Shown piece after piece: positions 1,475-63,210 of a stretch of 64,000 nucleotides of DNA. Source of the DNA: Geosiphon pyriformis uo1. Its lineage: Eukaryota; Fungi; Glomeromycota. The DNA lies in contig JAAOMT010000684.1 in NCBI GenBank assembly GCA_016748015.1, forward strand, positions 1-64,000, given 5' to 3'. The translations under genes were made by a program, and so were the position numbers. The notes below the pieces were generated by a model, which saw nothing but the letters and a program-made list of their open reading frames with translations, was not told where the DNA came from and did no database searches. Position 1 is the first letter of the stretch. Each line of letters opens with the position of its first letter.

Positions 1475-2812
1475 ATGCGTCAACAAACAAGCATTCAATC
1501 TACTACTAAACAACATTCATCTGCTTTTCAGCCAACAAGTCTAAGGAGAAACACACACGAGGCAGAGGATATATCAACTTCAACTTTTCCTTCACATTTA
1601 AATTTGCCAGTTGCTATTAATCAATTTAATCAACAATCTCAAGAAGGTTCAAATTCAAAAGCAAACTTACCCCTTTTCGAAACTCCACCGGTGTCTCCAG
1701 GGGGACAATCAATCTTTAGGCTACCAACGTCACCTCCACCTTTACATCCTCAGGATTCATCATTTAATAATAAAGAACCACCAAAATCTAAGAATCAATT
1801 TTGGCTCCCCCCAACACCTCCTAATGGATTAAATCAAGAAACGCCAAATTTTTCAAGTACAAGTCATACATATTTTGAGAATAATAATGCTTTGAACAAA
1901 ATACAATCCGAACCCTCTACCAATGTCTTTTCACTTCCAATTGATCTTGGCACCACAAATTCAAATGAACAACATACATTTACTTCTTCAAGTAACTCTC
2001 GTCCAATTATGTATCATCATACTTCGGTTATCCATCCAGCAATACCTCGTCAACAGCAAAATTCTTCTATTCCCGCTGATCGACCTCTTTCGTTAGCTGA
2101 AAAACGGGAGTTGGCTCGTAAAGTGTCACATTCTGCTATCGAAAGACGTCGACGTGAGAGGATCAATGACAAGATTATACAGCTACAACAACTTGTTCCC
2201 AGTTGTGCAAATCAGCCACAAATTCATAAATTGACTATTCTTCAGGGAGCCATCGATTATATTGGATATTTACAAAGTTGTCTCGCTGAAAAACGAAAAC
2301 ATGAGATGAATAGCACAAACGATGCTATGATGCTGGAAGAATGGCGATTTGTGAGGCAAATCAAGTCTGATGGATTGAAGAATTATCAACCACCTGTATC
2401 ATCAAAAACTTTTGAAATATCAATGGAAAGCCAAAGTACGAAAAATTCCATGTCTTCATCAGATACAAACATCATTAGACATGATATAACTTCTGGTGGA
2501 CCAGAGGAAAATAACTTTAGCTTAATAAACCAAAACCTTTTACAAGTGCCATCTTTGAGCCATCGATCGAACTCTCTATTTCGGCGCATTAATACGAGTT
2601 CTGATATAACCCAAATCCCAAGCATTAATCAAGAAATATCATTAAGTCACCCTGAAAACTGCGAAATTAACGCCAATAAAGTAGCTTCCACCACCGAGTC
2701 TAATAACCGAGTAATAGCTTCTATAAAGACGATAACCAGTCCTGAAGAAGATCGTTATAAACCAGACTCAACAAATGGCGACTCGATGTCGATAAATAAT
2801 TTGTTATGTTGA
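1475..2812 (+). CDS. bHLH transcription factor (class B, CACGTG-type), 445 aa
   Basis: Basic-HLH RKVSHSAIERRRRERINDKIIQLQQLVPSC..HKLTILQGAIDYIGYLQ with the H-E-R DNA-contact residues, flanked by S/P/N/Q-rich low-complexity regions. Confidence 0.92.
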   Translation: MRQQTSIQSTTKQHSSAFQPTSLRRNTHEAEDISTSTFPSHLNLPVAINQFNQQSQEGSNSKANLPLFETPPVSPGGQSIFRLPTSPPPLHPQDSSFNNKEPPKSKNQFWLPPTPPNGLNQETPNFSSTSHTYFENNNALNKIQSEPSTNVFSLPIDLGTTNSNEQHTFTSSSNSRPIMYHHTSVIHPAIPRQQQNSSIPADRPLSLAEKRELARKVSHSAIERRRRERINDKIIQLQQLVPSCANQPQIHKLTILQGAIDYIGYLQSCLAEKRKHEMNSTNDAMMLEEWRFVRQIKSDGLKNYQPPVSSKTFEISMESQSTKNSMSSSDTNIIRHDITSGGPEENNFSLINQNLLQVPSLSHRSNSLFRRINTSSDITQIPSINQEISLSHPENCEINANKVASTTESNNRVIASIKTITSPEEDRYKPDSTNGDSMSINNLLC

Positions 2813-5722
2813 ATCGTTTAGGCTGATTTTCAATATCTTTTACGACCAAACAGCATCCACAACCTAATGAAATGTTGTAATAAAAAGACGATTTTCACTT
2901 TATTTTTCAAATCTTGACTACCTTAATAGCTTCAAACTCGATTACTTTAAATTCTTTGGTGTGTTTTTTTTTCTGAACTTTTTGATTAGGTCAATCATTC
3001 ATCACATGTACAAAGACTTGTAATATATTTTCTCGCTTTGCAATGCCGATAGTTTCCAAAAAATTATGGCTTTAAATTTCTTTAATTGGATAAATTGTAT
3101 ACGCGTCACATGCCTAAAGAGTATATTGCTTTTAGGAGGGGAAGAATCTAAAGTATTATTGAAAATGTTATATTTTTGTTTCTGATAAGTTTACTTAATC
3201 ACATGTTAGACTCTAAATTTTGTTTAAAAAAGCAACAAATCAAATCGACCTTTGCAGTGGCAAAATAAGGATCTAATGTATATGCTATTTTCTTAAATTT
3301 TAAAGGAAAAAAGGTTGTTTAATTTGGATTCCAAATCAAAAAGTAACACGTTAATGTGAAAATAATAAATTGATCTATCATGTTTTTAAGCAGATGTAAT
3401 TGTGGCAATGGTGAATGTGAAGTTTCTCCGCAAAGCAGGAAGTCAAGTAGATGTTTGAGAATCATTGCCTTTTTACAAGATGCCATACTATTTTGGCATT
3501 TACCAATTGAAAGCTGAAAGTCGTTAATTATCAGTATTATGTTGAACAATTAAAAATTTTTTTTTTCGATTTAGTATAAAATTTTCTATTTTAATAAGTA
3601 TATCAAAGAGAAAATCCTTTTTATTAATTTTCTTTTCTTTTTTCTCATGAAAAGACTTAAAGCTAAAAGGTTAGATTAAGTGTTATCTTCAAAAATTGTC
3701 AATTTTCCAATAATTTAATCAATTTAGATTTCATTAAAAAAACTTTATTGTCTTTGTTAAAAGTATAGAACCTTCTTTATTTTTAAATATTTCTTTAAGT
3801 AAAAAAAAAAACCTCTGATCTTTTATTCAAGTTCCAGGAAATAGTTGATTGAAGCATCTCCCATTAAAAGTTAAAGTCACCAGGAGAAATAGTCACGATT
3901 GAATGCTTTTTACACTTTAAGCTAATCGAGTTTAAACTATTCAAAAAATTAGGGGAGCTCTTGTCGATAAGAAAAAAAACTTGACGTATTTATTTTCCTA
4001 AAAACGGGAAGCTAAAATAGTGCGTATAGTATTGGATATATTTAAAAAGTAAAATTTTATTTTTTTGTATTCTTGGGGAAAGTAATTTTATAATCCAACC
4101 TTGTTCAAACGAAATTTCGTAAACTCAGTGATGCCTCTATTTTTCAATTTTTTTTTTCATTCAGACGGTAAAAATATTATGGTCACAATTTTTAGTTTTT
4201 TGTTTTTCGCAGCCGATCATTTAAGCTAGATTTGTGTATCTCAAAAAAATTGGACATTCAATGAGAGTGCATGTTGTCATGTGAAGGTTTTAATAAACAT
4301 TTAAATAATTCACGACAGGCTTCAACCCTTTTTAGAAGTGGATTCATATAATTTAAGATTCAAAGATCGAAGTTTCCCTTAAATTATAAGTGTTATGGAG
4401 CGGCATCCCAGGATTTCTTTCTGCCAAGAATATTCCTTTTTGAGGTAATTAAAAGAGTAATCATATAAAGCTTAAATATAAACAAAGTGGTTGAATTATA
4501 TTACTGTCAATGACCGATGAAATTAGATTACTTTTAATAACTGGTTGAATTATAGCTAATAGAATTATAGAAATTTTCAATTTTTTGGATATGACCTTCA
4601 AATCGTTCAACTGAAGAAGTTTTGACAACTATTTCGAAATTGTCTGTCATGTTTACACAAGAATTTGTGATCAATTTCAATCACAATAGCTAAAAAGGTG
4701 ATTAGTATAGGTAAAATTCATTAAGGATAATTAAACCAGGTATTTCCAGAACGAATTCACGGAAAAAACCATCCCATAATCATAAAAGCTACTAAAAAAT
4801 CATATGAGTTTATGTGTTTGCAATGTTTTTAAAGATTTACACCTTTGTACAGCAAAATACAATACCCATTAATATTTTTCGTGAGGTAGTCATGCCAAAG
4901 GTAATTCTTTTTTGTTATCTGATTGTGATCGTCACCGTTCCTAAAATAATGAAATGGTATCAGATTTTTTCTTTAAAAAACTCAAAAAACTATCATATCT
5001 ACTTGGAGGATAATGTAAATTTAAGGAAACATCATTTTGAAATTTTTTATTTTCTCGTGTTACCTTCAAAAGAAATGCTGAATAGTAAATAAAAGTGTTA
5101 AAAGGAAATATTCTCTTAACACGTGAGTTCAAATAATGTATTCTTGGCAAACCATTTTAAAAGGAAAATCCCACGATAGCATACAATTACCTAAAGATTG
5201 ATATTTAAACTTGATTAGAAATAATGGTGAGATCTTTGTGTATTTATTTGTGAAATACAATGCAGGCTTATTGTCAATCAAATTTTCCCAGGACTTTTTT
5301 CTCGCGAGAAAAAAAAATTATAAATTGATTAGTGCAATAAATAATTAAGAGTACCACAAATCAGGCATGGAATGATCCAGAATGGTTTTTACTCAGGGAA
5401 TTATTAAATGGGATATAAAGTAGATTTTCCTTTAGGAATTCTCAATTAAAACCCTTAATATTTAACATTTGAAAAAATCAAACGATTGGATTAGCATTAT
5501 ACTAGGTTATTGGTGCTCAGAGCTGCTAATAAACTCAAAACAGGTAATTCTCAAGCTCAAAAACCATGGCTAAATCGCATTATAGTTTTCTAGAATTTTA
5601 CAAAAGTCCCTTGGAGATTTAGGGTACGTTATTGAACCCACAATCACGAGTCCATGTCAAAGATCAGTTATATTTGAAGAAGCTTTACTTTTATAAAAGT
5701 ATTTTTTAAAAACTGTTGAAGA

Positions 5723-5773
5723 GGGATAGGATTGGATTGGATAGTATAGGATAGGATTGGGTTGGGTTGAGGG
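5723..5773 (+). repeat. Degenerate G-rich pentamer repeat (ATAGG/ATTGG/GTTGG)
   Basis: gggatagg attggattgg atagtatagg ataggattgg gttgggttga ggg, read directly. Confidence 0.6.
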
Positions 5774-6072
5774 TTAAAGAATAGGCTTACTGCTTGTAGT
5801 AGGGAATAGAGATTATGTTTGATTTACAATATTTTGAAATTAAGAGTTTCTTTGTTCTTGATATTTTTTTCTAGTAAAGATTTTGCTACAATTCTAACGA
5901 TTCGTGATTAAATTTAAGTTTAGGTTCATTGTACAAGCTGATGAAAGACATTTTTATGGATCACTCGAACTTTCTCAGCTAATTTCTCTCCTGTTTAAAT
6001 TTAATTTGATCGGCCTTTAAAACAGCCAAAAATAAAATAAAACCAAAAACGAAACCAATTCATAGAAATTAC

Positions 6073-6105
<33 letters not shown>
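6073..6105 (+). repeat. (AAT)11 microsatellite
   Basis: Read directly. Confidence 0.9.
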
Positions 6106-6193
6106 TTAGATAGCTTATTTTTTGGAAAATTAGTAAAATCTTCGCTAAATTGTCAAAATTTAATAATGATCCCTAATCTCATTAATATGGATG

Positions 6194-6730
6194 CAGTGGA
6201 ACCTCGATTCGGGAATAATTTTAATTTTGGTTTGAATGATGTCCCTTATAATTTTGTAGAATAAGAGTACTTTTAATTTAGGATTCCCTAAACCTTGTCC
6301 CGGACCGCAACCATTTCTCTCCGATAACCATTAAGGTACGCATATGTCGAAATTTTTAAAAATAAATAAGCGTTAAAATATTACCATACTCCCACTTAAC
6401 AGTTAAACAAAACAAAAATGATCTTTCTTGATTTTCCCGGGGGGATAAAAAGTTTGTTTGTAGAAATAGTATCAAGAATGTTTAACCCTTCTTTTTGATT
6501 TAAACCTATGAATATATGTGATCCGAAAAAGATCTTGATGATAACCATCAAGGTACTCATCGGTAGCCCACGATAAGCTTTTTTTCATGGGGACATGATC
6601 AACTTCATATGCTACATAGAAAATCATTACCTTCAATTTAGCTGTACCAATCAAATGATTTTCTTTACCCACAAAGGTACATATTTTAATTGTTGGGGAT
6701 ATTGGTAATTATGACATGTAGTTTCACCGA
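6194..6730. mobile_element. Possible decayed Tc1/mariner-type MITE
   Basis: CAGTGGAACCTCGATT at 6194 resembles Tc1/mariner/pogo TIR ends. The partner near 6718-6729 (gtagtttcaccg) is weak, so the right boundary is uncertain. Confidence 0.25.
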
Positions 6731-7175: not shown

Positions 7176-8428
7176 ATGGATCATATGAAAGGTATGTCAT
7201 TTGAAACCTAGTTGGTTTCTAATTATCAAAAGTCTTTCTAATTGAACCTTTTTTCGATATATAAAAAGATTTGGGCCAAAGAAATCTGTCAATGGAAACA
7301 GATTTATGCTCAAATATTCAAGTCTCATCCGTAAAAACCACTTCCATATTGACTACAACTGGGAGACTCGACCCAGCAGAATATTCCCAAAAAATTTTTA
7401 TGCCAATATTAACACATGAGTCATACTTAAATGAAGCAACAACTAGTCTATCAAGATTACCTTCCAAACAAGAAACCAGATCAATTTCAGATTTTTGCAT
7501 TGATGACTCATCACAAGAAAATGAATTTATGTCGAATTTTTCTATTAAAGCACATTTTGAGGATTCTTCACCGGAACGAAAGCAAGGTTCTTCATCCAAA
7601 GATTCTTTTTCTTTTTGCCGTCCCCCTATTGATATTTCCAAAATTTTGTTCCAATCATATGAATCAATCCCATTCTTACATCATCCAACTTCAATTCATC
7701 AACATTGCGACCATGTTACTTTTACAGAAGAGTCCTCACTTTCCTTGACTGAAAGACGAGAATTGGCGCGGAAAATTTCGCATTCTGCAATTGAACGTCG
7801 TCGACGAGAACGAATTAATGAAAAGATTTTACAACTGCAAAAGATGGTTCCATGTTGTGCCAACCAACAACATATTCATAAGTTGACAATTCTTCAAGGT
7901 GCAATCGACTATATTAATTATTTACAAGGTTTACTTGCCGAGAAACAAAATCAAAATACTCATGGTATTAACGAAGGAAGTCGAGCCTTGGACGACTGGA
8001 AATTTGTGAAACATATGAAACTTGTATCTTATGATAGTAAAAAACAGACTTCCTCTCCAATTCCATCATTTGAACGTGAAAATTCCGATTTTCCTTTTGA
8101 TTCAAGATTTCCAATAGCTTCAAAGACACCCATCAAAGATAAATCGCCTTTCCTATCTGATTATCTAAAGATTTCCAGCCTTTGTCAAGATAAAGAGACA
8201 TTTTGTCATCATTCACAAATGCCAACTTCTTGTACATTTTCCTGTCAGGATGAATTTTCCGGAGCTCAAATTGGAGTAAAATCTCTTCAATCACAAACTT
8301 CTCAAAATCAAGTCGATAATTTTAGTTCAAACACACAATGCAAAAGCACTGATTTAAATAAAAATCAGATTCAAACATTAAATTCGACTTCCAAAAGACT
8401 AATGTCGGTGAAAAACTTGTTATCTTGA
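7176..8428 (+). CDS. bHLH transcription factor, tandem paralog of 1475-2812 (2 exons)
   Basis: Exon 1 7176-7191 (MDHMK-G). Intron 7192-7268 (GTATGT..ctaat..AAG) joins it in frame to the 7271 ORF. bHLH RKISHSAIERRRRERINEKILQLQKMVP..HKLTILQGAIDYINYLQ. Confidence 0.9.
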
Positions 8429-17819: not shown

Positions 17820-18509
17820 ATGACTAATGACGCATCAATCGCAAATCCTGGCCCACTTGGTATAGTTTCATAATATAATCTATTCAGAAAAATACTTTCT
17901 GATTTGGCCGATCCAAAGTTAAAAAAACACCCATCTTTTCTCTATAAACCTACAGGTTTTAGTGCCTTTGCCTTGACTACCTTCGTGCTTTCGCTTTATA
18001 ACGTAAATGCCGGGAATGTTAAAAATCCACAAGTAGTTGTTGGTTTAGCACTTTTCTACGGTGGCCTTATACAGCTTTTAGCAGGAATGTGGGAATTTAA
18101 GAAAGGAAATACTTTTGGATCTACTGCATTCTCTTCTTATGGTGGTTTCTGGCTTTCATTCGCTACCATTCTCATTCCCAATTTTGGCGTTGCAGCATCA
18201 TTTGGCCTTGATAAAGATGAATTTGCACAGGCACTCGGTATATATCTTTTGGCCTGGACAATATTCACTTTCTTACTCTTCCTGGCAACCCTCAAGTCAA
18301 ATGGTGGATTGATAGCTTTATTCTTTTTTTTAACATTTACATTTCTTTTCCTTGCAATCGCCGAATTTACTCAAAATACTGGTATTAAAAAATTCGCTGG
18401 AGCTCTCGGTATTTTTACCGCTATTATAGCTTGGTATAATGCGTTATCAGGTCTTCTAACAAATGAGACTTCTTATTTCACTTTGCCATTGTACGAAATG
18501 AAAAAATAA
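17820..18509 (+). CDS. GPR1/FUN34/YaaH (AceTr, ADY2/ATO-like) acetate/ammonium transporter, 2 exons
   Basis: Exon 1 17820-17859, intron 17860-17955. Splicing restores the family signature ANPGPLGFSAFALTTF. Also FYGGLIQLLAGMWEF and SSYGGFW, with about six TM segments. Confidence 0.92.
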
Positions 18510-27495: not shown

Positions 27496-28374
27496 TTACC
27501 TCGTTTGCTTTGATAAAAATGACCCTAATTGCTTCTTAGCAAATTTATTTCCATTCTTCACAGCGATATGAGCCCATCTGATGGCTTCATGCAAGTCTCG
27601 ATTTGTTCTTTCTCCCGTTTGAAAGCATTTACCAAATTTATAAGCAGCTGTAAAAGATCCCCCTAATGCAGATTTCTTATACCAAAAGAAGGCTGCGCCT
27701 GAGTCTTGTATGGTGCCTTTTCCATTTTGAAAGCAGTCCCCAAGAGCATTTTGAGCTGCTCTATATCCTCCTTTTGCTGATTTGCTAAACCAAAAAAAAG
27801 CTTTTTCAATATCCTCCACAGTCCCGATGCTGTCATAATAACATCGTCCTAAATTATATTGAACTGCAGCTGATGCATATCTACTTGTTTGATGATTTTT
27901 ATCACAATCCTTTTTGGTAAATGCGAGCTTCATGGTCTCTTTATTTGCATGAATATCCGATCCTTCGTCATTTTCACAAAATTGTTCTGTTTCAGCGGTT
28001 CTTTTATACCATTGAAATGCTTTCTCTTGATTAATGATCGTGCCAATGCCGTATAAATAAAGGAAGGCAAGTAGAGAAGCAAATTGAACCTGATTCCGCT
28101 TCTTGTGTACCGCATTGAACATATCTCCCGGGCAGACCTTGTTAGTTTCAAGCCATTTGTGAATATTTTCAGCGATAATTTTATCTGTCTCCAAGCGATC
28201 ACCATCTGCGTTGAAAATTTTTAAAAGTTCATTTATGGATGGTGGTTCGTCATCGTTGACATTTAAAATAACCCATTTTTTGGTAGCAGATATTCGTTCG
28301 AATTCATTAGGGTGAAAAGGAATCCTATGACAGGTATTAGAAGCTGACAATACCATCTCATGACATTTGAACAT
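27496..28374 (-). CDS. Sel1-like repeat protein, 292 aa
   Basis: AAVQYNLGRCYYDSIGTVEDIEKAFFWFSKSAKGG and AAQNALGDCFQNGKGTIQDSGAAFFWYKKSALGG are Sel1 repeats. Confidence 0.9.
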   Translation of the reverse strand: MFKCHEMVLSASNTCHRIPFHPNEFERISATKKWVILNVNDDEPPSINELLKIFNADGDRLETDKIIAENIHKWLETNKVCPGDMFNAVHKKRNQVQFASLLAFLYLYGIGTIINQEKAFQWYKRTAETEQFCENDEGSDIHANKETMKLAFTKKDCDKNHQTSRYASAAVQYNLGRCYYDSIGTVEDIEKAFFWFSKSAKGGYRAAQNALGDCFQNGKGTIQDSGAAFFWYKKSALGGSFTAAYKFGKCFQTGERTNRDLHEAIRWAHIAVKNGNKFAKKQLGSFLSKQTR

Positions 28375-33098: not shown

Positions 33099-34066
33099 AT
33101 GGATTTTTCAACGTTTAATGATATGGAGAACAGAGCGATCCAAATATTTGAGAAGCAAATTCTTGACCAAACTTATGAAATTTTTAGTGTTGGAAACATT
33201 GATTGGGAATATTATTCTCAAATTGCCAGAAATATTTCACGACACATAAATAACAATAACTATCCATCTGAACGCTTATTCGACCTTGTTTTCCATGACC
33301 AAAATCACCCACAACGTCGTTGCCTTTTAGCCTTATTTTATGATTTTGGTATCGGCGTAGATGTTAATCGAGAAATGGCGTTCAAATTATATAAGGAAGC
33401 AGCTGAAGACGACGATCTATTGGCTCAAATTGAAGTAGGCCGGTCTTATGAAACTGGTCAAGATCTCATATTTCCTATAAGAATTGTAAATCTTAACATA
33501 GAGAAACTTTTGATCATTGATGTTCTTCAAAATCTGCAGGCATCGGTGTCGAGAAAAATCCAGAAAAGGCTTTTTGGTGGTACCAAAAAGCAAGTCTAAA
33601 AAATTTTTCCAGGGGATTCTTCTTTGTTGGCTCATCTTATGAATTAGGGGTAGGTACAACCAAAAATAGCCTCAAAGCCTTTGAATATTACCTATTGGCT
33701 GAAGCTGCCGGTTATACCCCAGCACGTCTTAAATTGGCGTATTGCTACAAAGTTGGGAGTTGTGCTCCTAAGAATGAACTTAAGGTAAATTAATCTTAAC
33801 CCCATTTAAATCGTTTGTGTTGTTAAATTATGTACAAATCTTCACACATATTTTTGCAGGAAATTTATTGGTATAAGAAGGCATCGGAATGTCGTAGCAA
33901 TCTAATCGCTCTTTCCTGTCTCGGTTGCAAATATGTCGAGGGCTCTGGTTTCAACAAAGATATACATGAGGCTTTTCGCTGCTTTACTAAAGGATTAAAA
34001 TATGGAGACCCAGATTTTCATGAATTTTTGAAACTTTTTTGTAAAAAATCCATCTATTCTAAATAA
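33099..34066 (+). CDS. Sel1-like repeat protein, 3 exons
   Basis: Introns 33457-33539 and 33785-33859 give continuous Sel1 repeats: AQIEVGRSYETGIGVEKNPEKAFWWYQKAS..ARLKLAYCYKVG..EIYWYKKASE..KDIHEAFRCF. Confidence 0.88.
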
Positions 34067-38692: not shown

Positions 38693-39760
38693 TTAATTAG
38701 GTGCCTTTGAGAACATATGTAGTAAATTTTCATATGCGGCCTTATGACCATTTTTGTGAGCGGATCGATAACATCTTATTGCCTCATGTATATCTCGTGA
38801 AGACCCTTGAGCGTACCGATAACAATATGCCAGATTATGTATTGCACTGGCATTCTTCCCATATGCTGCCGATTTCCGATACCAATATATACTTTTGTTT
38901 TTGTCTTTCCCAACCCCTTCACCATGTTGATATAGATACCCCAACCAATTTTGTGCACGATCATCACCCTCCGCAGCAGCTTTCGAAAACCAATAAAATG
39001 CCTCCTTAGTATTCTTTTCTATCCCTATCCCACTAAATAAACACGTTCCTAGCCAAAATTGTCCAGCAGGCCACCCACTTTCTGCAGATTTTCGATGCCA
39101 GAAAGCGGCCTTAGTTTCATTGATTGTTGTCCCAATTCCTTCTTTATAACATTGTCCAAGATTACATTGACCACTCGCGTCCCCACCCTTGGCCGATTGT
39201 GAATACCAAGCAAATGCTTTCTCAGAATCAGGCTCTGTACCAATCCCTTCTTGATAAAACCCTCCCAACCAACCAGCGGCTGTTGCACATCCGTTCGTCG
39301 CTGCCTTCTTAAACCAATATAAGGATTTGTCGTAATCTTTCGGTATTCCCAATCCGTAGTAATAAAATGCTCCTACTTGACTTTGTGCCTGTGGATCCTC
39401 AGCTTCGGCTGCAATCATGTTGTATTGAAATGCTTTTTCAGGATCCATATCACACCCTATTCCCCATTGATAAAGGAAAGCCAAGAAAAATGTATAATTA
39501 GGATCATCTCGTTGTTCATATACGGCCATAAAAAGTGTTTCAGGCTTGATCTTGTGAGTATTTAACCATTCGTTGACTTTTATTACGACTACTCTGTCGA
39601 TTTCGTATCGATCGTTCATTTCTTTATAAATTTCTAACAGTGGACCTAGGAAAGAAGACGTTGTCATTGTTGTTGTCGTCGTTGTTGTCTTTGTAGTTTT
39701 TTCATTTTGATTGGTTGACTCGTTATTTTCTTTAGTTGATTTCTTGACTATTTCTGCCAT
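38693..39760 (-). CDS. Sel1-like repeat protein, 355 aa, intronless
   Basis: About 7 Sel1 repeats (e.g. AQSQVGAFYYYGLGIPKDYDKSLYWFKKAATNG) and an N-terminal poly-Thr tract. Confidence 0.93.
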   Translation of the reverse strand: MAEIVKKSTKENNESTNQNEKTTKTTTTTTTMTTSSFLGPLLEIYKEMNDRYEIDRVVVIKVNEWLNTHKIKPETLFMAVYEQRDDPNYTFFLAFLYQWGIGCDMDPEKAFQYNMIAAEAEDPQAQSQVGAFYYYGLGIPKDYDKSLYWFKKAATNGCATAAGWLGGFYQEGIGTEPDSEKAFAWYSQSAKGGDASGQCNLGQCYKEGIGTTINETKAAFWHRKSAESGWPAGQFWLGTCLFSGIGIEKNTKEAFYWFSKAAAEGDDRAQNWLGYLYQHGEGVGKDKNKSIYWYRKSAAYGKNASAIHNLAYCYRYAQGSSRDIHEAIRCYRSAHKNGHKAAYENLLHMFSKAPN

Positions 39761-42700: not shown

Positions 42701-43018
42701 CAAACTCTCAAGGTTTAACCTTGCAATAAGGGATTTATTCTTCCATCGAACAAGAGATATGAAGAGCTGTTGTGACAAATTAAATTTCCTTTTTTAATCG
42801 AATTTTCTATTTGGTAATCGCTTGTGCTTAATTAAATTACATTAGGAATTTTGACATGCACCATCTTCAATCAAATATGTAGAACATGTTTGAAGCTGCC
42901 CATTATTTTAACATCTTAAAAGATTTTCCAGTCTGCTTCAAACCACCTTTGACCCAGTTTACTACAACTGGTTAAATTTCTCTTTCATTTTAATTCCTTC
43001 TCTTTTCTCCTTGATACC

Positions 43019-46000
43019 ATGAGGTTTCTATCCATCGAATCATGGCTAAGGCCAATAAAATCAACCAAAATTTTAGATTTGAAATTTTCTTTCTATTCTA
43101 TATTTTACATTTCCTTGGTAACTTTCATAATTTGGTCTCCAAAGCTCACTGACGCATTAATTAATCCCGCACCTGGAAATCGTATTGAACATTGCTCGGT
43201 TGCTTATGCGAATAGGTTCTATGTATATAGTGGTAATGGCGATGACCAAGTTCAAAGTTGGTTTAGCTATGTTGAAGCGCCATTCAATACCCAAAATCCA
43301 AAGTGGGTTGCAATGCCAGTTGAGGGTGCTCATAACGTTTCGCGAGCTGCTTGTGTGGTCACTTCGTCTGGTATTTTTTTAGTAATAGGAGGAGGATATT
43401 CTGAGGATCAAGATTATACTGGAGTATCTGCCTTTGACCTTGCGAAAGGAACGGATGGTACATGGTACGGAGGTTCCATTTTTTTTAGATAGAAACTTTG
43501 ATGCCAAAAGTAATTTTTTTTTTACTTATTGTTCTCAGGTATAAACCAAAAACTACGGGAATGGATACCACGAAATTTTTGAAATATAGAGATAGCCATA
43601 GAGCTATCAGTGGCATAACTTCCTTTAAAGAGGAGTTTGTCTTTGTATTTGGCGGGTACAAATCTAATGATACTTATATCCTTCGTGTTGCAAATATGAC
43701 ATGGGAAACTATTCCAATTATGGTATATTTCCAAAGACTTAACTAATTTTATCAGAGAAACAACAATATTCAAAATAACTGAAATTCTTACAATAAACTT
43801 TAGTCCAACAGTCCACCACAAAATGGATTATTTGGAATCGCCTATTCCAAAGATAATGTTTACATTGTTGGAGGCACTTCTGATTTCAATGGCGGTTTAT
43901 TTAATCAAATATGGGGATTTAATGTTCCAACTCGTAAATGGTTTGACCCACAATCCACCATGCCTACAGCCTGGTTCGATGCACATATTGGGAAGCTAAA
44001 CGATACATTTTTCATGGTATCAAGTGATGCTAGTTCTATGTCATCGATGAGAATTTGGGTAAGATGTTTAGAATCAATCTAACCAATTTAACTTTTCCAT
44101 TCTAACGCTGTAAAAAATTCTTTAATCAGACTCTTTCCAACAACTCATTTTGGACCGATAGAGGTTCTATGTCAACACGCGGTCATGAATATTATTCTCA
44201 TGCTCAACTACCTGGGAGTGATGCCCTGATTGTAAGTTGTTTTTTTTTGCGATATTTTTGACTGGTATTTTTTGGAAAATCTGATGGATTACTTTTAATA
44301 ATATTAGACTTATGGCGGCAATGGAAAAAAAAATTCCACTAATTCCACCGAGTCGGATGCTCCTACTTCTGATTTATTAGTTTTTAATATGACTAAAAGG
44401 CTATGGGTAACAGAATGTAATATCGTGACGAATGCACCAATGGATCAATACGTTGGTGGGCCTTTAGCCACTAATCAAGAAGATCCCTTCCTGAAAAAAA
44501 CTACAACTCCCAATGGTAATGATGTCCCAGGAAATGACTCAACTTCTTCGAATACATCATCATCATCGTCCAAAACCAGGAATATATTTATTGGAGGTGG
44601 CGTGGTAGCAGCAATTTCCTTTGCATTAGGTGTCTATCTTGCGATAAGAAATCGAATCAGAAAGAAAATAAAACACATAACTGTCGAACCCAAAGATTAC
44701 CAAGATCTTGAAATTTCTCACCCAGATTATATGACTGGAACGCCATATAAATCAGTAAAATTTAATGCTTTTCCTGAACAGCAAAAACCGGAATCGAGAC
44801 CAATTACGCCAAAGTTTCCTAACTACCCACAATCTGCAAATGCCTCTAGTTCAAGTATTAGAAAACCGGAATCGAAACCAATTACGCCAAAGCCTCCTAT
44901 CTACCCACAATCTGTAAATTCCTCTAGTTCAAGTGTTAGACTTCTAAATCCAACGACAGAAAATAACTCTCATGAAATGCGTGTTCGTCCGAACTTTGAC
45001 ACTAGTTGTAAATTCAAAGACGAGGTCTTTGGGCGTCATAAACTTACTGCAATGATCTACGATCAACCTGACGCTTCATCGATTGGTCCTTCAGCACCAA
45101 CCGGAACTGTAATATTGCATCGGTATCGGTTAGGCGGAAACTCTGTTAACGGTGGTAATAATACCGTGAGACAAGCTCATGACGAACAAACGGACGACCA
45201 AGTTGCGATGAAATTCTTTCAAAGTTATGAGTCATTTGAACGCGAAGTTGTTATGTTGAAATATCTTCGATCACGTCACGTTGGTGAATTACTGGCTTTG
45301 TACGAACTTCCATCAAAAGAAGATTGGCCTTATCTTGGTGTATTAAATTATTATCCCCAAAGCCTTGATAAACTTATCCTGACAAAACTCTCCACCATGG
45401 ACTCTTTATATATTAAACTTGTGATAAAATCTTTAACCCAAGCAATTCATTATCTTCATACACATAATGTGGTCCATTTGGATATCAAACCTGCGAATTT
45501 TGTACATGAATCAGGTGATATTACTTCTTGGTAAGTTTTTTTTTAATTGACTTATATTCTGAGTGGGAAGCAAATCTTGAAAAACTTTGCGCGTTTCATT
45601 TTCTTAAAAGGAGATTAATTGACTTCGAGGCAGCAAGAATAATCGGCGAAGAACCAGTAGACGATTGTTCGCCTTTATATTGTTCACGTAGGTTATAACC
45701 CTTTCTGTCTATTTTTGAGCTTTATCAAAGGATTATTAACAGTGAGAAAATTACATATTTGTATAGCCGAAGTTCTGAATGGAGCACAAACACAATCTTT
45801 AGTAATCGCATCATCGGAAATGGATATGTGGTCGCTGGGTTGCATTATCTTTGAACTTTATACCCACACGCCACTTTTCTATTCACAAGACGAAGCATTC
45901 GAAAAATTATCACAGATTTATCATGCGGGTCAGTTCGTGGATCCACCATTTAACAAAATTCCCGACTTACAAGCAAGAAATATGTTAGAGAAATTGTTGT

Positions 46001-47052
46001 CTGCAAAACCCTCTGAGCGAATTTCTTGTGAACAAGTACTTCGTTCAGCTTTTTTGAATTCCGGCTTAGACACAAGACAAGTAGGGATCATTTTTTTGAT
46101 AATTAATTCTTGAAGTATTTTTGAAGCTAGTGCTAACATTCTGGGTTGTCATGAAAGTTGTCAAGTTTGCAATCAGAGTCAACGAACCGCATCATAACAG
46201 CAGTGAATCAAAATACAACAACAATTCTATCAACCTTGCAAGAAACCACTAATCTCATCCTAAGCCAAATCGACGCTGTTATTAATAGTGTAACAGACAC
46301 GATGGATGCTGCCATTCCTAGATTGTATATTCTTCTTCCTGGAAACGAATCAAAGTCATTATTTAAACCTCAAAACTGGGGCAAAAACACTTTCATCCTG
46401 CACCTCTTATGCGAGGGTCTAGATCCTGAAAATCGAGAAGCTCATTTTACATCTCATAATGGTTATTCAATCCATGACCCGAAACCTTTATTGGCCAAAA
46501 CTGGACCTTATTTATCAATCTTGGCTAAGTTGATGGGTGCAGGGGTAATTTAAAGATATAATTTCAAGTTTTCAAGTAAACAAACAATATTCATTAATAA
46601 CATAATTTTCAAATTTTTTTCAGGTCGGACATTTTACTCATTTGAGACTGCCGGTTAACTTTGGGGAAATTCTGGGTCAAATGAGCATACGACCTACAGA
46701 ATACTTTAAACAATTAACAACTGTTCTTGACATTGCTACGAATGATCCACAACAACTAAAAGACATTGAAATTATTAAGAATGACCCCATTGGTCGTATG
46801 AAAGTCGTACAAGGTCCAGCATTACGAGAACTAGAAGCCTTTTTGGAAAAGAATGATCAAGCGCGCGAGTTGGGAGGCTTAGAACGAATTGTACTAAATA
46901 ATGGTCGGTGGCGATGGGTCTGCGAGGACTGTCAAAAGAAGGTGCATGAAAGGTTAAATAATGAAAATGCACATGATCATCAAATTAATCACCAAGTCGT
47001 TGAAACCTACTATATGAGTGACGAAGATTATTCATCGGGCATGGCAATGTGA
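43019..47052 (+). CDS. Single-pass receptor-like Ser/Thr kinase: signal peptide, Kelch beta-propeller, TM, non-RD kinase, C-terminal helical domain (~1138 aa, 9 exons)
   Basis: Exons 43019-43464, 43539-43722, 43804-44058, 44130-44231, 44308-45530, 45611-45687, 45767-46080, 46158-46544 and 46624-47052 total 3417 nt, with all introns GT-AG and in frame. Kelch GG/W motifs (FLVIGGG, VFVFGG, VYIVGG, LITYGG). TM IFIGGGVVAAISFALGVYLAI-RNRIRKK. Kinase motifs VAMK, HLDIKPAN, DFE, YCSPE, DMWSLG. Confidence 0.88.
44785..44940 (+). repeat. In-frame 78-bp tandem duplication in the kinase juxtamembrane region
   Basis: KPESRPITPKFPNYPQSANASSSSIR / KPESKPITPKPPIYPQSVNSSSSSVR. Confidence 0.9.
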
Positions 47053-57374: not shown

Positions 57375-58523
57375 ATGTCACACGATCGAACAAGTCCAAT
57401 AACTTCCGTACATAATGAAGAGAGAACTTTCACCTATAGCTGGACTATTCCTGGCTTTCAAGATTTAGTCCGACGAGTGCCAACTGGTTATTTTTTGTAT
57501 AGTGACCTTTTTTGGTCACCATATGATGATGAAGCATCAGATTTCTTGATATCAGCTAACAGAGATTTAAGGCATTCATGGAGATTGCGTATGTATCCAC
57601 GGGGCTATGACGAACGATATAAATCTTACCTCTCAGTGTACCTCGAAGGTTTTCAAACACAATATGAAAAAGAAAATAATTTGACTAGGCAAAAAGAATT
57701 TGAATTAGAACTCTATCGTATTCGAAATGATGGTGATAATATGGGTACAGCTCCAATCTTTCTTGCCTGTCTAAAGCGTTCCTCCCAGACTTTTAATTTC
57801 AATAACGTTATTAATTGCGGCCAGCACCAATTTTGTTCACTCGAAAATATATTTCCAAATCATGATCGAAATATTAACACCTCTTTAATAATCCGGGTTC
57901 GCATCTTTGAGAATACGGCAATTAAATTGCCGAGTTCACAATTTCGGCAGTCACCCCCGGTCGGAACTTCCCAGCAAATCGTTTTACCACCAGGATTTGA
58001 TGCATTTTTTGGTGATGAGCGTCTAGCTGACGTGGAATTTTTATTCGATTGTGGTACTAAAATCAAATCTCATCGGATTGTGCTTGCAGCCCAGTCTTCA
58101 TATTTCAATACCTTGTTGTTAGGTGGATGGAAAGAAGCCGAAATGGAAACGATTCCAATCAAGGACACCGATCACAAAGCGTTTCGATCTCTGCTGTATT
58201 ATTTCTACAATGGTAAAATCGAAAGAATCTCAAATGTAGAGTTACTGATTGGAGTTTATACTCTGGCAGATAGATTTGGGCTTCAGGCAGTTGCTTCTAT
58301 GGCTACCGATCAGATAATCGGGTTATTAAATGAAGAAAATTGGGATGAAATTTTATTGCTTGGCTGGCATACTTGTAACACGGGAATGAAGCAAACTGGA
58401 ATTGAATTTGCAGCAAACAATTGGACAAATGTGAAAGAAAGTGACAACACAAAGAGGATTCTCCAATCGCAGGATATAAATTTGGTGGAAGAATTAATGT
58501 CAGGCGTTTTCTTTCACCGGTAA
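57375..58523 (+). CDS. MATH-BTB (SPOP-like) cullin-3 adaptor, 382 aa
   Basis: MATH: FTYSWTIPGF..WRLRMYPRG..YLSVYL..LIIRVRI. BTB: ADVEFLFDCGTKIKSHRIVLAAQSSYFNTLL..AFRSLLYYFYNG..LADRFGL. BACK-like tail. Confidence 0.93.
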   Translation: MSHDRTSPITSVHNEERTFTYSWTIPGFQDLVRRVPTGYFLYSDLFWSPYDDEASDFLISANRDLRHSWRLRMYPRGYDERYKSYLSVYLEGFQTQYEKENNLTRQKEFELELYRIRNDGDNMGTAPIFLACLKRSSQTFNFNNVINCGQHQFCSLENIFPNHDRNINTSLIIRVRIFENTAIKLPSSQFRQSPPVGTSQQIVLPPGFDAFFGDERLADVEFLFDCGTKIKSHRIVLAAQSSYFNTLLLGGWKEAEMETIPIKDTDHKAFRSLLYYFYNGKIERISNVELLIGVYTLADRFGLQAVASMATDQIIGLLNEENWDEILLLGWHTCNTGMKQTGIEFAANNWTNVKESDNTKRILQSQDINLVEELMSGVFFHR

Positions 58524-60257: not shown

Positions 60258-63210
60258 CTAACCGTCATCATCAGATTCATCAGATTCATCATCTTCAACT
60301 ATGTGCTGCTGAGCTTGAGACCGCATTAACATTTTAATCTCTTCCATCGCTTGCTGGGCATGCTTATTCGATTTATCAAGCAACTGAATTTTTGCCAAGT
60401 CAACTAAAGCTTTTTTAAACTGCCCTTGCTGCCGAAGTATGATCGCATGTTCCATTAAACCAAAAATATTATTTGGTTCTTTCTTGAAACTCTCTTCCAA
60501 ATCCAATAAAGCCTCAGGATACCTGCCGAGAACCCTATAAACACTAGCCCTATTTAATAAGGCTTTCCTTTGATACGATTCATCAAAATCATCTTCAGGA
60601 TGGTAACTAATTACAAGGTCAAAATCTGATAATGCTTCTTTATATAATTCCATTGATCGGAATAGTGCACCACGTGATGCTAATGGGAACCAATGTCCAG
60701 GCTTAATGGATAAACTCTTGTCGAAATCTTTGATAGATTTGTCATAAAGACCTAAAGCATGATTCACTTCCCCGCGATAACAAAGGGACCATACGTTTCC
60801 CGGCTCAAGTTGCAAAGCTTTGTTGAGATCAACTAACGCTTCTTCGTATCTTCCTCTTAAGTAATAGATATTCCCACGACATCGTAAAGCAAATGCATTA
60901 TATCCATCCAAATCCAAAGCACGATCCAAGTCTGTTATAGCATCATCTAGTCGATGCAAAGATTGATAAACTTTACCACGTGTGCATAAAGCGAAGGTAT
61001 CATTTGGTTCTTTTTTCAAGGCATCTGAAAGATCGGCTAAAGCATCAGCGTAAAAGCCTTGCATACGATAAATGTTGCCGCGAATTCGAAGAGCAAATGC
61101 GTTATCTGAGTCCAGAGAGATGCATTTATTTAGATCGGCGAGGGCGAGATCATACTGACCAATCATGCGATACGAGGCCCCACGGATTCGAAGAGCAAAC
61201 TCATTATTCGGTTCAATCGCGATAACACGATTAAGGTCGGCGATTGATTGTTCGTATAGACCTACCATTCGATAAACTTCACCACGATTTGCCAAAGCAA
61301 ATGTGTTATGATTTTCATTTTCAATAACCTAAAAAATTATAAAAAGCTTTATTTCGACTAGAATTGGTAATTTAAAATCATTTACTTAAAACCTATATTC
61401 TTTCATTTAATTACCTTGTTCAAATCTTTTAATGCACTATCGTATTGGCCTATCATTCGATAAACTTCACCACGATTTTTTAGTGCGAGGTTGTTTTCGG
61501 GTTCCAAAGCCAATGCCTTAGCTGAAGAGAAAATATTAAATTTCATAACATTAATAATTGCATCCATGCCCGCCTTGTGTACAGTAACAAGTTAATAATA
61601 CCTAGATCAGACAAAGAATCATCAAATCTTCTCAATGACTGATATATTTCAGCTCTATTCAAGATAGCATTGATGTTAATAGGCTCTATGGTCAATGCCT
61701 TATCGATATCAATTAAAGCTTCCTCAGGCCGATTTGTCAATTGGTATATTCTACTTCGTGTTTTCAAAGCCAAAGAATTTTTTGGATTAGATTTTAAGAC
61801 CTCATTTAAATCAATCAAAGCCTCCTCATAACGATTCAAGGCGAAAAAGACTCGGCCACGTGTTCGTAATGCAAATCCATTATCGGGTTTCAATTCGAGT
61901 GCTTTGTTAAGATCAATTAAGGCTTCTTCATATCTTTCTAACATATAATAAAGCCTACCACGGATTCTAAGAGCGAAGGCATTATTTGGTTCTATCTCTA
62001 AGGCGATGTTAAAATCTTGCAAAGCCTCGCCACATCGACCTCGAATATAATAGATTTGTCCACGTGTACGAAGTGCGAATACGTCATTGGGCTTCAATTC
62101 GAGTCCCCTACTCAAATCTTTCTCTGCCTTTTCATAATTTTGTAAATATTCGTAGATTCTTCCACGTGTGATCAAAGCAAATGAGTCTTCAGGATTCAAT
62201 TCCAAAGCTCGATTTAAGTCTGTCAAAGCTTCTTCGTGTCTTTGAAGGCTGCGATAAATTTCACCCCTGTTGGCCAAGGTTGGCGCATCGTTAGGCTCCA
62301 ATTGTAAAGCTACCTCCAAATCAGCCAATGCTTCTTTATTTCGATTCAATAAACGCAAAACACCACTGCGATGACGTAAAGCTTCAATTTGAGTGGGAGA
62401 AATCTCTAGAGCATGATTGAAATCGACTAAGGCTTTCTCATTATCTTTTATGAGGCGATGAATGCTTCCGCGATTTATAAGTGAAATGGTATTGTCAGGA
62501 TCGATCTGAAGGGCGTTATTGTAACATGATAAAGCGTTGCCATATTGATGATTTGCATTGTAGGCGTCAGCTAAGTGGTTGTAAATTTCTGTATTTGTTT
62601 GATCATAGTGAGCTGCTCTCGTAAGGTCAGCTACGTTATCAAAAATTTTAAAAAAAATTAAAAATTAAAAAGTTTATAACGGATTGAATCCTTCCTAACA
62701 TTATTTCGTTTTAAAGGTAAATAAAATCAATGAATTTTTGAATGAAAAATTGATTATCATACCTATTGCCTTTTCATAATGTCCAAGTTTAAGATAAACC
62801 TCACCACGAGAATGCCAAGCAAATGAATCATCTTCAATTTCTAACGAGTCGTTCAAATCTTTTAAGGCCTCTTCATATTTTCCCAACACACTATACACGC
62901 TTCCACGACTTCCTAGAGCTTTCGCGTTCCTGGGCTCAATAGATAAGGTTTGATTGAAATCTTTCAAAGCATTTTCAAATTCATCCAAATTATGGTACAA
63001 ATCCCCCCGAGTCCTGAGTGCATGTACATTATAGGGGTCGATTGAAATCGCTCTGGATATCTTCGCTAACCCCTGATCATTGTTTCCTAGCATCGCATAA
63101 ACATAACCTATATCAGTGAGTACTTTTGGATTATTTGGCTCCTGCGTGAGAAGTGTGTATTTTTCAGCTAATGTTTTTTCAAGTGTAGATGGTTTTGGGC
63201 TTATTGACAT
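60258..63210 (-). CDS. Long tetratricopeptide-repeat protein (~884 aa, 4 exons)
   Basis: Exons 63210-62763, 62630-61602, 61521-61415 and 61328-60258 total 2655 nt in frame. About 24 consecutive TPRs (ALxxRGxxYxxLxxYEEALxDLNKALELxPxN) and an acidic tail. Confidence 0.92.

What the first reader, a model, noticed from the sequence alone, without database searches (positions are those of the whole stretch)
43019..47052. Fungal single-pass receptor-like kinase: Kelch ectodomain with an intracellular non-RD kinase
Seen: six ORF-track fragments plus three untracked exons splice into one uninterrupted ~1138-aa frame. It has a signal peptide, Kelch repeats, an S/T-rich stalk, one TM helix with a basic stop-transfer, and a kinase domain. 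The catalytic loop is HLD (non-RD), DFG is DFE, and the Gly loop is degenerate (GGNNTV), but the catalytic Lys, Asp and Asn are kept. Established: single-pass receptor Ser/Thr kinases are essentially absent from Dikarya apart from Ire1, non-RD kinases are associated with pattern-recognition receptors in plants and animals, and Kelch and kinase families are each expanded in AM fungi. Inference: a candidate surface receptor for microbe, host or carbohydrate signals.
Basis: partly seen in the sequence, partly recalled or inferred. Interest (0 to 1): 0.8.

Follow-up and report, generated by a model that had tools for sequence, protein, structure and literature searches.

The report
Fungal Kelch receptor-like kinase gene
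One gene of the fungus Geosiphon pyriformis encodes a membrane protein with a Kelch propeller predicted outside the cell and a protein kinase inside, a receptor-kinase design that fungi were reported to lack, and it belongs to an old, undescribed family of early-diverging fungi.

Summary
Nine exons (43019-47052, +) joined by eight GT-AG introns of 71-81 nt give one 1138-codon frame without a stop. The window comes from Geosiphon pyriformis. The deposited protein G9A89_000991 (1111 aa) matches this model from residue 43 to the end and differs only at the 5' end.

- **Architecture:** signal-peptide-like N-terminus, six-bladed Kelch propeller (model pLDDT 83.6), Ser/Thr/Asn-rich stalk, one TM helix with a basic stop-transfer, a disordered juxtamembrane stretch, and a kinase with HLD, DFE and a degenerate Gly loop. 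The catalytic Lys, Glu, Asp, Asn and Asp are kept.
a conserved 271-aa C-terminal tail with no Pfam, NCBIfam or PDB match. It is homologous to the region after COR-B in a few bacterial LRR-Roc-COR proteins.
- **Phyletic range:** full-architecture orthologues occur in Archaeosporales, Paraglomerales and Gigasporaceae/Acaulospora. Chytrids carry TM-kinase-tail (one also Kelch), in one case within a single exon. Tail-less pseudokinase relatives occur in Endogonales, Calcarisporiella and Mortierellomycotina. None was found for Glomerales or, among named hits, for Dikarya.
- **Gaps:** no RNA evidence could be obtained, and ligand, localisation and activity are untested.

This is a new variant of a known kind, a receptor kinase of independent origin. 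The range argues against a role specific to mycorrhiza.

The parts
43019..47052 (+). Whole gene: 9 exons, 8 introns, 1138 codons plus stop
   Evidence: Frame and splice-site check. 100% identity of all exon translations to deposited protein P0155 from exon 1 residue 43 onward.
43019..43156 (+). Signal-peptide-like N-terminus (residues 1-46). Hydrophobic core at residues 21-39. Small residues at -3/-1 (T-D-A) before L-I-N-P.
   Evidence: Hydrophobicity scan. The same kind of segment lies just before the conserved PAPGxR motif in the complete glomeromycotan orthologue models. The Ambispora leptoticha protein aligns from residue 4. The cleavage site is an inference.
42886..43144 (+). Alternative 5' end of the deposited model: ATG 42886, 15 codons, then a 214-nt GT-AG intron (42931-43144) that skips the hydrophobic N-terminus
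   Evidence: Reconstructed from P0155's first 15 residues. The intron is about three times longer than the other eight. There is no orthologue support.
43157..44466 (+). Six-bladed Kelch beta-propeller ectodomain (exons 1-4 and the start of exon 5), with 10 N-x-S/T sequons
   Evidence: Pfam Kelch hits. AlphaFold model pLDDT 83.6, pTM 0.84. Foldseek top hits are six-bladed Kelch domains KLHDC2, NS1-BP, KLHL and Keap1, E 1e-14 to 1e-11. Sequon counts.
44467..44583 (+). Ser/Thr/Asn-rich stalk, predicted disordered
   Evidence: Translation. pLDDT below 50 for the last 25 ectodomain residues. Comparable stalks in orthologues.
44584..44640 (+). Single transmembrane helix (exon 5 residues 93-111), followed by a basic stop-transfer cluster
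   Evidence: Kyte-Doolittle 2.16 over 19 residues. A TM segment lies at the same place in most relatives with a complete model, including the chytrids.
44641..45126 (+). Juxtamembrane region: low-complexity linker plus a conserved pre-kinase segment
   Evidence: 24% mean identity to orthologues in the linker, against 59% in the pre-kinase segment. Sequences.
44784..44940 (+). 78-bp tandem duplication (2 copies, 91% match) encoding two 26-aa P-I-T-P-K containing units in the juxtamembrane linker
   Evidence: Tandem Repeats Finder. A longer array of related PITP units occurs in a Paraglomus occultum paralogue.
45127..46080 (+). Protein kinase domain (end of exon 5, exon 6, exon 7). Lys codon 45211-45213 (VAMK), HLD 45475-45483, DFE 45621-45629.
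   Evidence: Pfam Pkinase. Motif alignment with relatives. Nearest solved kinases are GSK3, CaMK1D, CDPK, ULK3 and TTK, all at about 62-69 bits.
46158..47049 (+). Conserved C-terminal tail (exons 8-9, 271 aa): long helix, core A (PR..LLPG, LLCE, HFT.H.GY), variable linker, core B (RPTEYF, LRE.E.FL, WGGL, W.C..C). Unannotated domain shared with bacterial LRR-Roc-COR proteins.
   Evidence: 76% and 54% identity to Ambispora. Alignments A1 and A3. hhalign to P0166 residues 676-837, probability 95.5%, E 1.4e-8. No Pfam, NCBIfam or PADLOC hit. No PDB fold match.

Best explanation
The locus is one intact, single-copy gene of Geosiphon pyriformis. It encodes a type I single-pass membrane receptor-like Ser/Thr kinase.

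Shown by sequence, models and comparison:
- an N-terminal signal-peptide-like segment;
- a six-bladed Kelch propeller rich in N-glycosylation sequons;
- a Ser/Thr/Asn-rich stalk;
- one TM helix with basic residues on its C-terminal side;
- a disordered juxtamembrane linker;
- an orphan eukaryotic protein kinase domain that is non-RD (HLD), has DFE in place of DFG and lacks a canonical Gly loop, but keeps the catalytic Lys, the alpha-C Glu, the catalytic Asp, Lys and Asn, and the metal-binding Asp;
- a conserved C-terminal domain of about 230 residues that also ends a few bacterial LRR-Roc-COR proteins.

Inferred mechanism:
- The propeller faces the cell wall or outside and binds a still unknown ligand, either a glycan or a protein.
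- Binding changes the oligomeric state or conformation of the cytoplasmic part.
- The kinase is non-RD, so it is probably not switched by activation-loop phosphorylation. It then phosphorylates substrates, or itself in the Ser/Thr/Pro-rich juxtamembrane region.
- The tail serves as a regulatory, oligomerisation or output module. It may be held together by a Cys/His/Cys/(Cys or His) metal site.

The family is ancient in fungi, so the role is more likely general environment or cell-wall sensing than sensing of a symbiotic partner.
For: - **One gene:** exon 5 alone is an uninterrupted 407-codon ORF that joins the last Kelch blade, stalk, TM, juxtamembrane region and kinase N-lobe. All nine exons are in frame and match the deposited protein P0155. 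In the chytrid Irineochytrium, residues 82-954 (Kelch, TM, kinase, tail) lie in one exon. In Zopfochytrium one exon spans the kinase end and the tail start.
- **Topology:** an N-terminal hydrophobic segment plus one internal TM in nearly all relatives with a complete model. Sequons are 2.6 per 100 residues outside against 0.86 inside, and a basic cluster follows the TM.
- **Propeller:**
- **Kinase residues:** conserved across AM-fungal and chytrid members. Pfam Pkinase is above its cut-off.
- **Tail:** core A is the most conserved part, 72% mean identity against 67% for the kinase and 55% for Kelch. Homology to the bacterial post-COR-B region. The best Atlas fold matches are ROCO clusters, TM 0.47-0.51.
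- **Single copy:**
- **Range:**
Against: - No transcript, protein, localisation or activity data.
- The deposited annotation splices out the signal-peptide-like segment.
- No dedicated signal-peptide or topology predictor was available, only hydrophobicity, charge and sequon heuristics.
- The Gly loop is degenerate and DFG is DFE. Tail-less relatives in Endogonales, Calcarisporiella and Mortierellomycotina have lost catalytic residues, so signalling in this family may not need catalysis.
- The tail model is of low confidence (pLDDT 61.5). The proposed metal site rests on alignment columns only.
- Plasma-membrane localisation, as opposed to ER, is not shown.
Confidence: 0.6

Rival explanations
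1. Same membrane architecture, but the kinase domain is a pseudokinase or weak kinase. It would signal by scaffolding or allostery, as many plant and animal receptor pseudokinases do, and the tail would be the real output module.
For: The Gly-rich loop lacks GxGxxG and DFG is DFE in all tail-bearing members. The related tail-less proteins of Endogonales, Calcarisporiella and Mortierellomycotina have lost the VAIK Lys, the HxD Asp, the Asn and/or the DFG Asp. The tail core is more conserved than the kinase.
Against: In the AM-fungal and chytrid clade the Lys, alpha-C Glu, catalytic Asp, Lys and Asn, and the DFE Asp are kept (a single Paraglomus occultum paralogue has His for the loop Lys) across a very deep split. 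Such retention is not expected if catalysis were dispensable.
Confidence: 0.25
2. An endomembrane (ER or Golgi) luminal sensor kinase in the manner of Ire1 or PERK, not a cell-surface receptor. The Kelch propeller would monitor luminal glycoproteins or folding.
For: The only widely accepted single-pass sensor kinase of fungi, Ire1, is an ER protein (general knowledge). Signal peptide plus TM fixes the orientation but not the compartment.
Against: There is no KEN/RNase or other Ire1/PERK-type domain in Pfam scans of the exons or orthologues. The long Ser/Thr/Asn-rich stalk next to the membrane is typical of fungal cell-surface sensors such as Wsc1 and Mid2 (general knowledge). I saw no KDEL/HDEL-like or di-lysine end; the conserved end is G-M-A-M/I.
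Confidence: 0.12
3. Annotation artefact: two neighbouring genes (a Kelch membrane protein plus a kinase or tail gene), or an unexpressed pseudogene, read as one frame.
For: There is no RNA evidence. The link between kinase and tail in this window rests on one predicted intron (46081-46157).
Against: Kelch, TM and kinase N-lobe share one ORF (exon 5). There are no stops or frameshifts in 3417 nt. Identity to distant orthologues is 55-72% domain by domain. Kinase and tail are contiguous within single exons in two chytrids. The same architecture was predicted independently in about 12 species.
Confidence: 0.03

Closest known systems
Plant receptor-like kinases of the RLK/Pelle group, especially non-RD pattern-recognition receptors such as EFR and FLS2
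   Same: Type I layout: signal peptide, ligand-binding repeat ectodomain, one TM, cytoplasmic Ser/Thr kinase. The catalytic loop is non-RD (PMC8463890 describes the non-RD class).
   Different: The ectodomain is a Kelch propeller, not LRR, LysM or lectin. The kinase is not closest to IRAK/Pelle/TKL: its nearest solved kinases are GSK3, CaMK1D, CDPK, ULK3 and TTK, all at similar low scores. It has DFE instead of DFG. It carries an extra C-terminal domain that I do not know from plant RLKs. This points to independent origin.
Trypanosoma brucei Tb927.5.3150 and the Kelch-repeat RLKs of Chlorophyta
   Same: A predicted signal peptide, Kelch repeats, a TM and a protein kinase in one protein (PMC8519429). 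Kelch repeats are listed among ectodomains of green-algal RLKs (PMC12757656).
   Different: Homology to these proteins was not tested here. They did not appear among the 150 best hits whose names I looked up. No ROCO-type tail is described for them.
Fungal cell-wall integrity sensors Wsc1-3 and Mid2 (general knowledge)
   Same: Signal peptide, extracellular head, heavily Ser/Thr-rich stalk, single TM, short basic stretch inside. This is a fungal cell-surface location and a plausible mechanosensing or cell-wall-contact role.
   Different: Those sensors have a cysteine-rich WSC head or none and only a short cytoplasmic tail without an enzyme. Here the head is a Kelch propeller, and the cytoplasmic part has about 700 residues with a kinase and a further domain.
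Bacterial LRR-Roc-COR (ROCO) proteins with a C-terminal extension (P0166-P0169)
   Same: The last 165 or so residues after COR-B are homologous to the fungal tail (hhalign 95.5%, E 1.4e-8). Invariant P, C, H, G, Y, D, G, L, W and C columns are shared. In both cases the domain ends the protein, behind a signalling switch domain.
   Different: The window protein has no LRR, Roc or COR-A/B. The bacterial proteins have no kinase, Kelch or TM. The domain is rare in bacteria: 3 of 201 genomes of that phylum.
Ire1
   Same: A single-pass membrane protein of fungi with a luminal or extracellular sensor domain and a cytoplasmic Ser/Thr kinase followed by a further C-terminal domain.
   Different: No KEN/RNase domain and no Ire1 luminal domain in Pfam scans. 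The kinase is not specifically similar to Ire1 among PDB hits.

Membership tests
Eukaryotic protein kinase superfamily (Pfam PF00069) | Profile match above Pfam's gathering score | tested here: met
   Exon 5 scores 51.0 bits and exon 7 scores 49.0 bits against a cut-off of 31.7. The orthologue P0001 scores 118.7 bits.
Eukaryotic protein kinase superfamily (catalytically competent members) | VAIK Lys, alpha-C Glu, HxD Asp, catalytic-loop Lys/Asn, DFG Asp | tested here: met
   VAMK, F-E-R-E, H-L-D-I-K-P-A-N and D-F-E are present and conserved in AM-fungal and chytrid members.
Eukaryotic protein kinase superfamily (catalytically competent members) | Canonical GxGxxG loop and the Gly of DFG | tested here: not met
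   The loop reads G-G-N-S-V-N-G-G-N-N-T-V, and DFG is DFE in all tail-bearing members. Activity therefore needs a bench test.
Non-RD kinases | No Arg before the catalytic Asp | tested here: met
   HLD in Glomeromycotina and HAD in chytrids.
Kelch beta-propeller | Kelch profile matches and a six-bladed propeller fold | tested here: met
   Kelch_6 at 25.6 bits (cut-off 25.3) in exon 2 and Kelch_4 at 22.3 bits (cut-off 21.6) in exon 3. PF24681 at 96 bits in P0001. Model pLDDT 83.6. Foldseek E 4e-14 to KLHDC2, with about 345 aligned columns.
Type I single-pass receptor topology | Cleavable signal peptide, one TM, ectodomain outside, kinase inside | tested here: inconclusive
   The heuristics agree: hydrophobic N-terminus, TM score 2.16, basic residues after the TM, sequon bias, and conservation in relatives. 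No SignalP or DeepTMHMM was available and there is no experiment. The deposited model lacks the signal peptide.
Plant/animal RLK-Pelle-IRAK (TKL) kinases | Kinase domain groups with IRAK/Pelle/RLK kinases | tested here: not met
   The best solved relatives are GSK3, CaMK1D, CDPK, ULK3 and TTK at 62-69 bits. No IRAK or RLK chain is among the 60 best. No tree was built.
ROCO proteins | Roc GTPase followed by COR-A/COR-B | tested here: not met
   No Roc or COR match in any exon or in 18 tails, even at E up to 10. hhalign places the tail after COR-B of P0166, not on it.
Ire1/PERK-type ER stress sensor kinases | Ire1 luminal domain and KEN/RNase domain, or eIF2-alpha kinase features | tested here: not met
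   No such Pfam family in the exons or orthologues.

The most novel reading that the evidence does not exclude
Fungi ancestrally had a true receptor Ser/Thr kinase family of independent origin: signal peptide, Kelch propeller, TM, non-RD kinase, and a new, possibly metal-binding C-terminal signalling domain shared with bacterial ROCO GTPases. The family survives in chytrids and Mucoromycota and was lost in Dikarya and in Glomerales. This would overturn the view that fungi have no receptor-kinase architectures. It would also define a new output or oligomerisation domain common to kinase-based and GTPase-based switches.
Probability: 0.4. Interest if true: 0.8.

Novelty: new variant of a known kind. 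Interest (0 to 1): 0.66.

Why it matters
[quoted passage not shown] 2019, PMC6733946). Ire1 is the usual sole exception.

This gene and its relatives are a conserved counter-example in early-diverging fungi. The catalytic residues are retained across the split between chytrids and Glomeromycotina.

The family offers three things:
- a concrete candidate for how non-Dikarya fungi sense their surface or surroundings;
- a test case for convergent evolution of receptor kinases, since the kinase is not of the RLK/Pelle type;
- a new conserved domain that links a eukaryotic receptor kinase to bacterial ROCO proteins.

The range also sets a limit. The family is present in chytrids and Mortierellomycotina and was not found in Glomerales, so it is unlikely to be a receptor specific to AM symbiosis or to the Nostoc symbiosis.

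Tried and rejected
- **Spliced model:** The only joined operation was a frame and stop count in a script. Searches went exon by exon by reference, or used the deposited protein P0155.
- **Tail as a COR domain:** suggested by the Atlas fold hits. Rejected because no COR profile matches and hhalign puts the tail behind COR-B.
- **Tail fold in the PDB:** Foldseek gave nothing below E = 1. VIA-align wide gave a best Z of 4.7 on single helices. The model is too weak (pLDDT 61.5) to call the fold new.
- **Atlas feature search:** it gave HECT fragments at score 0.86 with only 114-127 shared features, which is chance level. Exon 8 alone gave nothing.
- **Other libraries:** NCBIfam and PADLOC gave nothing for the tail.
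- **Paralogues in the same genome:** none for exons 5, 8 or 9 beyond one unrelated kinase at 28% identity.
- **Literature:** five searches for a described fungal Kelch receptor kinase, or for the accession numbers, found nothing.
- **Earlier notes of this scan:** nothing relevant.
Full report
**1. What is in the sequence**

The region is AT-rich eukaryotic DNA, with coding stretches at GC 0.35-0.43 and spacers at 0.17-0.31. I read the DNA and the ORF list and placed nine exons:
- 43019-43464
- 43539-43722
- 43804-44058
- 44130-44231
- 44308-45530
- 45611-45687
- 45767-46080
- 46158-46544
- 46624-47052

A script confirmed that all eight introns are GT...AG and 71-81 nt long. The phases match, and the 3417-nt CDS has no internal stop: 1138 codons plus TGA. 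That script only counted frame and stops and printed junction contexts. No joined sequence was given to any search or fold tool. Searches were made exon by exon by reference. Later I also used a deposited protein that turned out to be this gene's product.

**2. Identity of the locus**

The exhaustive protein search with exon 5 and the word search with an orthologue's tail returned P0155, "hypothetical protein G9A89_000991 [Geosiphon pyriformis]", 1111 aa. It is 100% identical to every exon translation from exon 1 residue 43 to the last residue. So the window is Geosiphon pyriformis (Glomeromycotina, Archaeosporales). The assembly has 128 Mb in 792 contigs.

The deposited model differs only at the 5' end. 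It starts at ATG 42886, encodes 15 residues, and removes 42931-43144 as a 214-nt intron.
- Every complete glomeromycotan orthologue model has a hydrophobic, signal-peptide-like segment ending in small residues directly before the conserved PAPGxR motif. This holds for Ambispora (two species), Dentiscutata (two species), Gigaspora, Acaulospora and Paraglomus.
- The Ambispora leptoticha protein aligns with the window's exon 1 from residue 4.
- The 214-nt intron is about three times longer than the other eight.

**3. Domains**

Pfam on single exons finds Kelch in exons 1-3 and Pkinase in exons 5 and 7.

The ectodomain (P0155 16-394, with 18 relatives as the alignment) folds with pLDDT 83.6 and pTM 0.84 into an all-beta structure. 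The last 25 residues are disordered. Foldseek matches six-bladed Kelch propellers (KLHDC2, NS1-BP, KLHL12/17, Keap1, LZTR1) at E 4e-14 to 1e-11 over about 345 columns.

The remaining parts run in this order:
- a Ser/Thr/Asn-rich stalk;
- a 19-residue hydrophobic helix with Kyte-Doolittle score 2.16;
- a basic cluster (A-I-R-N-R-I-R-K-K-I-K-H);
- a low-complexity juxtamembrane linker that contains a recent 78-bp tandem duplication;
- a conserved pre-kinase segment;
- the kinase.

N-x-S/T sequons are 2.6 per 100 residues in the ectodomain and 0.86 per 100 in the cytoplasmic part. Most relatives show the same bias (weak in Calcarisporiella). Together with the positive-inside rule, this supports an orientation with the N-terminus outside and the kinase inside. 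It is not an experimental result.

**4. The kinase**

In an alignment of 22 relatives, the Lys, Glu, Asp, Lys, Asn and Asp are conserved in nearly all AM-fungal and chytrid members that carry the tail (one Paraglomus occultum paralogue has His at the catalytic-loop Lys). DFE is a family trait, and the chytrids have HAD. The tail-less relatives from Endogonales, Calcarisporiella and Mortierellomycotina have lost several catalytic residues and look like pseudokinases.

Against solved structures the domain is about equally distant from GSK3, CaMK1D, CDPK, ULK3 and TTK, at 62-69 bits. It is not close to IRAK or plant RLK kinases. It is therefore an orphan Ser/Thr kinase, and the receptor layout arose independently of RLK/Pelle.

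**5.

Exons 8-9 encode 271 residues with no hit in Pfam, NCBIfam or PADLOC. Core A of the tail is nevertheless the most conserved part of the protein: 72% mean identity to nine orthologues, against 67% for the kinase and 55% for the propeller.

An 18-sequence alignment shows invariant P-R, H-x-T, G-Y, R-E, F and G positions, plus nearly invariant L-L-C-E and W columns.

The AlphaFold model is mediocre (pLDDT 61.5). It has no convincing PDB neighbour. Its three best ESM-Atlas neighbours are bacterial ROCO clusters, at TM 0.47-0.51.

At the sequence level the tail matches a bacterial LRR-Roc-COR-A-COR-B protein, P0166. That protein lies in a bacterial genome next to toxin-antitoxin pairs. hhalign places the match on residues 676-837, behind COR-B, with probability 95.5% and E 1.4e-8. 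So the tail is not COR. It is a separate, unnamed terminal domain.

Three more such ROCO proteins were found. A joint profile found the domain in 3 of 201 genomes of that bacterial phylum.

In the joint alignment the invariant columns include one Cys (L-L-C-E / L-Y-C-Q), one His, and the Cys of W-x-C followed three residues later by Cys or His. I infer a possible metal site. This is not tested.

**6. One gene or several**

Exon 5 by itself links propeller, TM and kinase N-lobe in one ORF. The kinase-tail link in this window depends on intron 7.

In Irineochytrium annulatum, residues 82-954 (Kelch, TM, kinase, tail) lie in one uninterrupted exon. In Zopfochytrium one exon spans the kinase end and the tail start. 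The same architecture was predicted independently in about a dozen species.

**7. Distribution**

- **Full architecture:** Geosiphon; Ambispora gerdemannii and A. leptoticha; Paraglomus brasilianum and P. occultum (several paralogues); Gigaspora margarita and G. rosea; Dentiscutata (two species); Racocetra; Cetraspora; Acaulospora morrowiae.
- **TM-kinase-tail, with Kelch also detected in Irineochytrium:** the chytrids Irineochytrium and Zopfochytrium.
- **Kelch-TM-pseudokinase without the tail, a signal peptide where the model is complete:** Endogone, Jimgerdemannia and Calcarisporiella.
- **Related pseudokinases without a detected Kelch domain:** Mortierella, Linnemannia and Modicella. A short relative occurs in Piptocephalis.
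- **Not found:** no protein named from Glomerales or Diversispora appeared in two word searches of a collection that includes NCBI nr. No Dikarya protein appeared among the named top hits. This means "not found", not "proven absent".
- **Copy number:** the gene is single copy in Geosiphon.

**8. Comparison with what is known**

Kiss et al. 2019 reported no receptor-kinase architectures in fungi (PMC6733946).

Kelch-bearing membrane kinases have been noted in Trypanosoma brucei (PMC8519429) and in green algae (PMC12757656).

I found no paper on a fungal family of this kind or on any of the accession numbers.

**9. Verdict**

The receptor-like-kinase reading is supported at the level of sequence, models and comparative genomics. 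The pattern-recognition or symbiosis flavour is not supported by the distribution. The conserved ROCO-type tail is an additional, undescribed feature. Function, ligand, localisation and activity remain inferences.

Noticed in passing
window 42886-43144: The deposited GenBank model (G9A89_000991) starts at ATG 42886 and removes a 214-nt intron. This deletes the signal-peptide-like segment that all complete orthologues have, so it is probably a mis-annotated first exon.
   Followed up: yes
window 44784-44940: A 78-bp tandem duplication (2.0 copies, 91% match) encodes two 26-aa units with P-I-T-P-K in the juxtamembrane linker. A Paraglomus occultum paralogue (P0005) has about ten related PITP units.
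   Followed up: partly
window 47029-47049 (last residues): The extreme C-terminus G-M-A-M (G-M-A-I or V-A-M in others) is conserved in many glomeromycotan orthologues after a variable acidic stretch. It may be a terminal sorting or binding motif.
   Followed up: no
P0008, P0010, P0015, P0042, P0016, P0021 (relatives): Tail-less relatives in Endogonales, Calcarisporiella and Mortierellomycotina have lost the VAIK Lys, the HxD Asp and/or the DFG Asp. The Endogonales and Calcarisporiella members still have Kelch and a TM (a signal peptide too where the model is complete). They form a family of membrane pseudokinases.
   Followed up: partly
L005 (bacterial contig JAABRD010000004.1, gene at 4001-6538): The bacterial LRR-Roc-COR protein that shares the tail domain lies directly downstream of two toxin-antitoxin pairs (VapB/YafQ and Phd/YoeB) and a WD40 gene.
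   Followed up: no
window 1475-2812 and 7271-8428 (+): Two ORFs with bHLH DNA-binding domains lie 4.5 kb apart (E 1e-15 and 3e-16).
   Followed up: no
window 27496-28374 (-), 33099-33599 (+), 38693-39760 (-): Three Sel1-repeat ORFs lie upstream of the gene. Sel1 proteins are a known expanded class in Glomeromycotina.
   Followed up: no
window 57375-58523 (+), 60258-62358 (-), 17904-18509 (+): A MATH-BTB ORF, two adjacent TPR-rich ORFs (possibly exons of one gene) and a Gpr1/Fun34/YaaH acetate-transporter-like ORF.
   Followed up: no
Paraglomus proteins P0159, P0163, P0004, P0164, P0165, P0005, P0003: Paraglomus species carry several paralogues of the family. Some gene models end right after the kinase. 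Geosiphon has one copy.
   Followed up: partly
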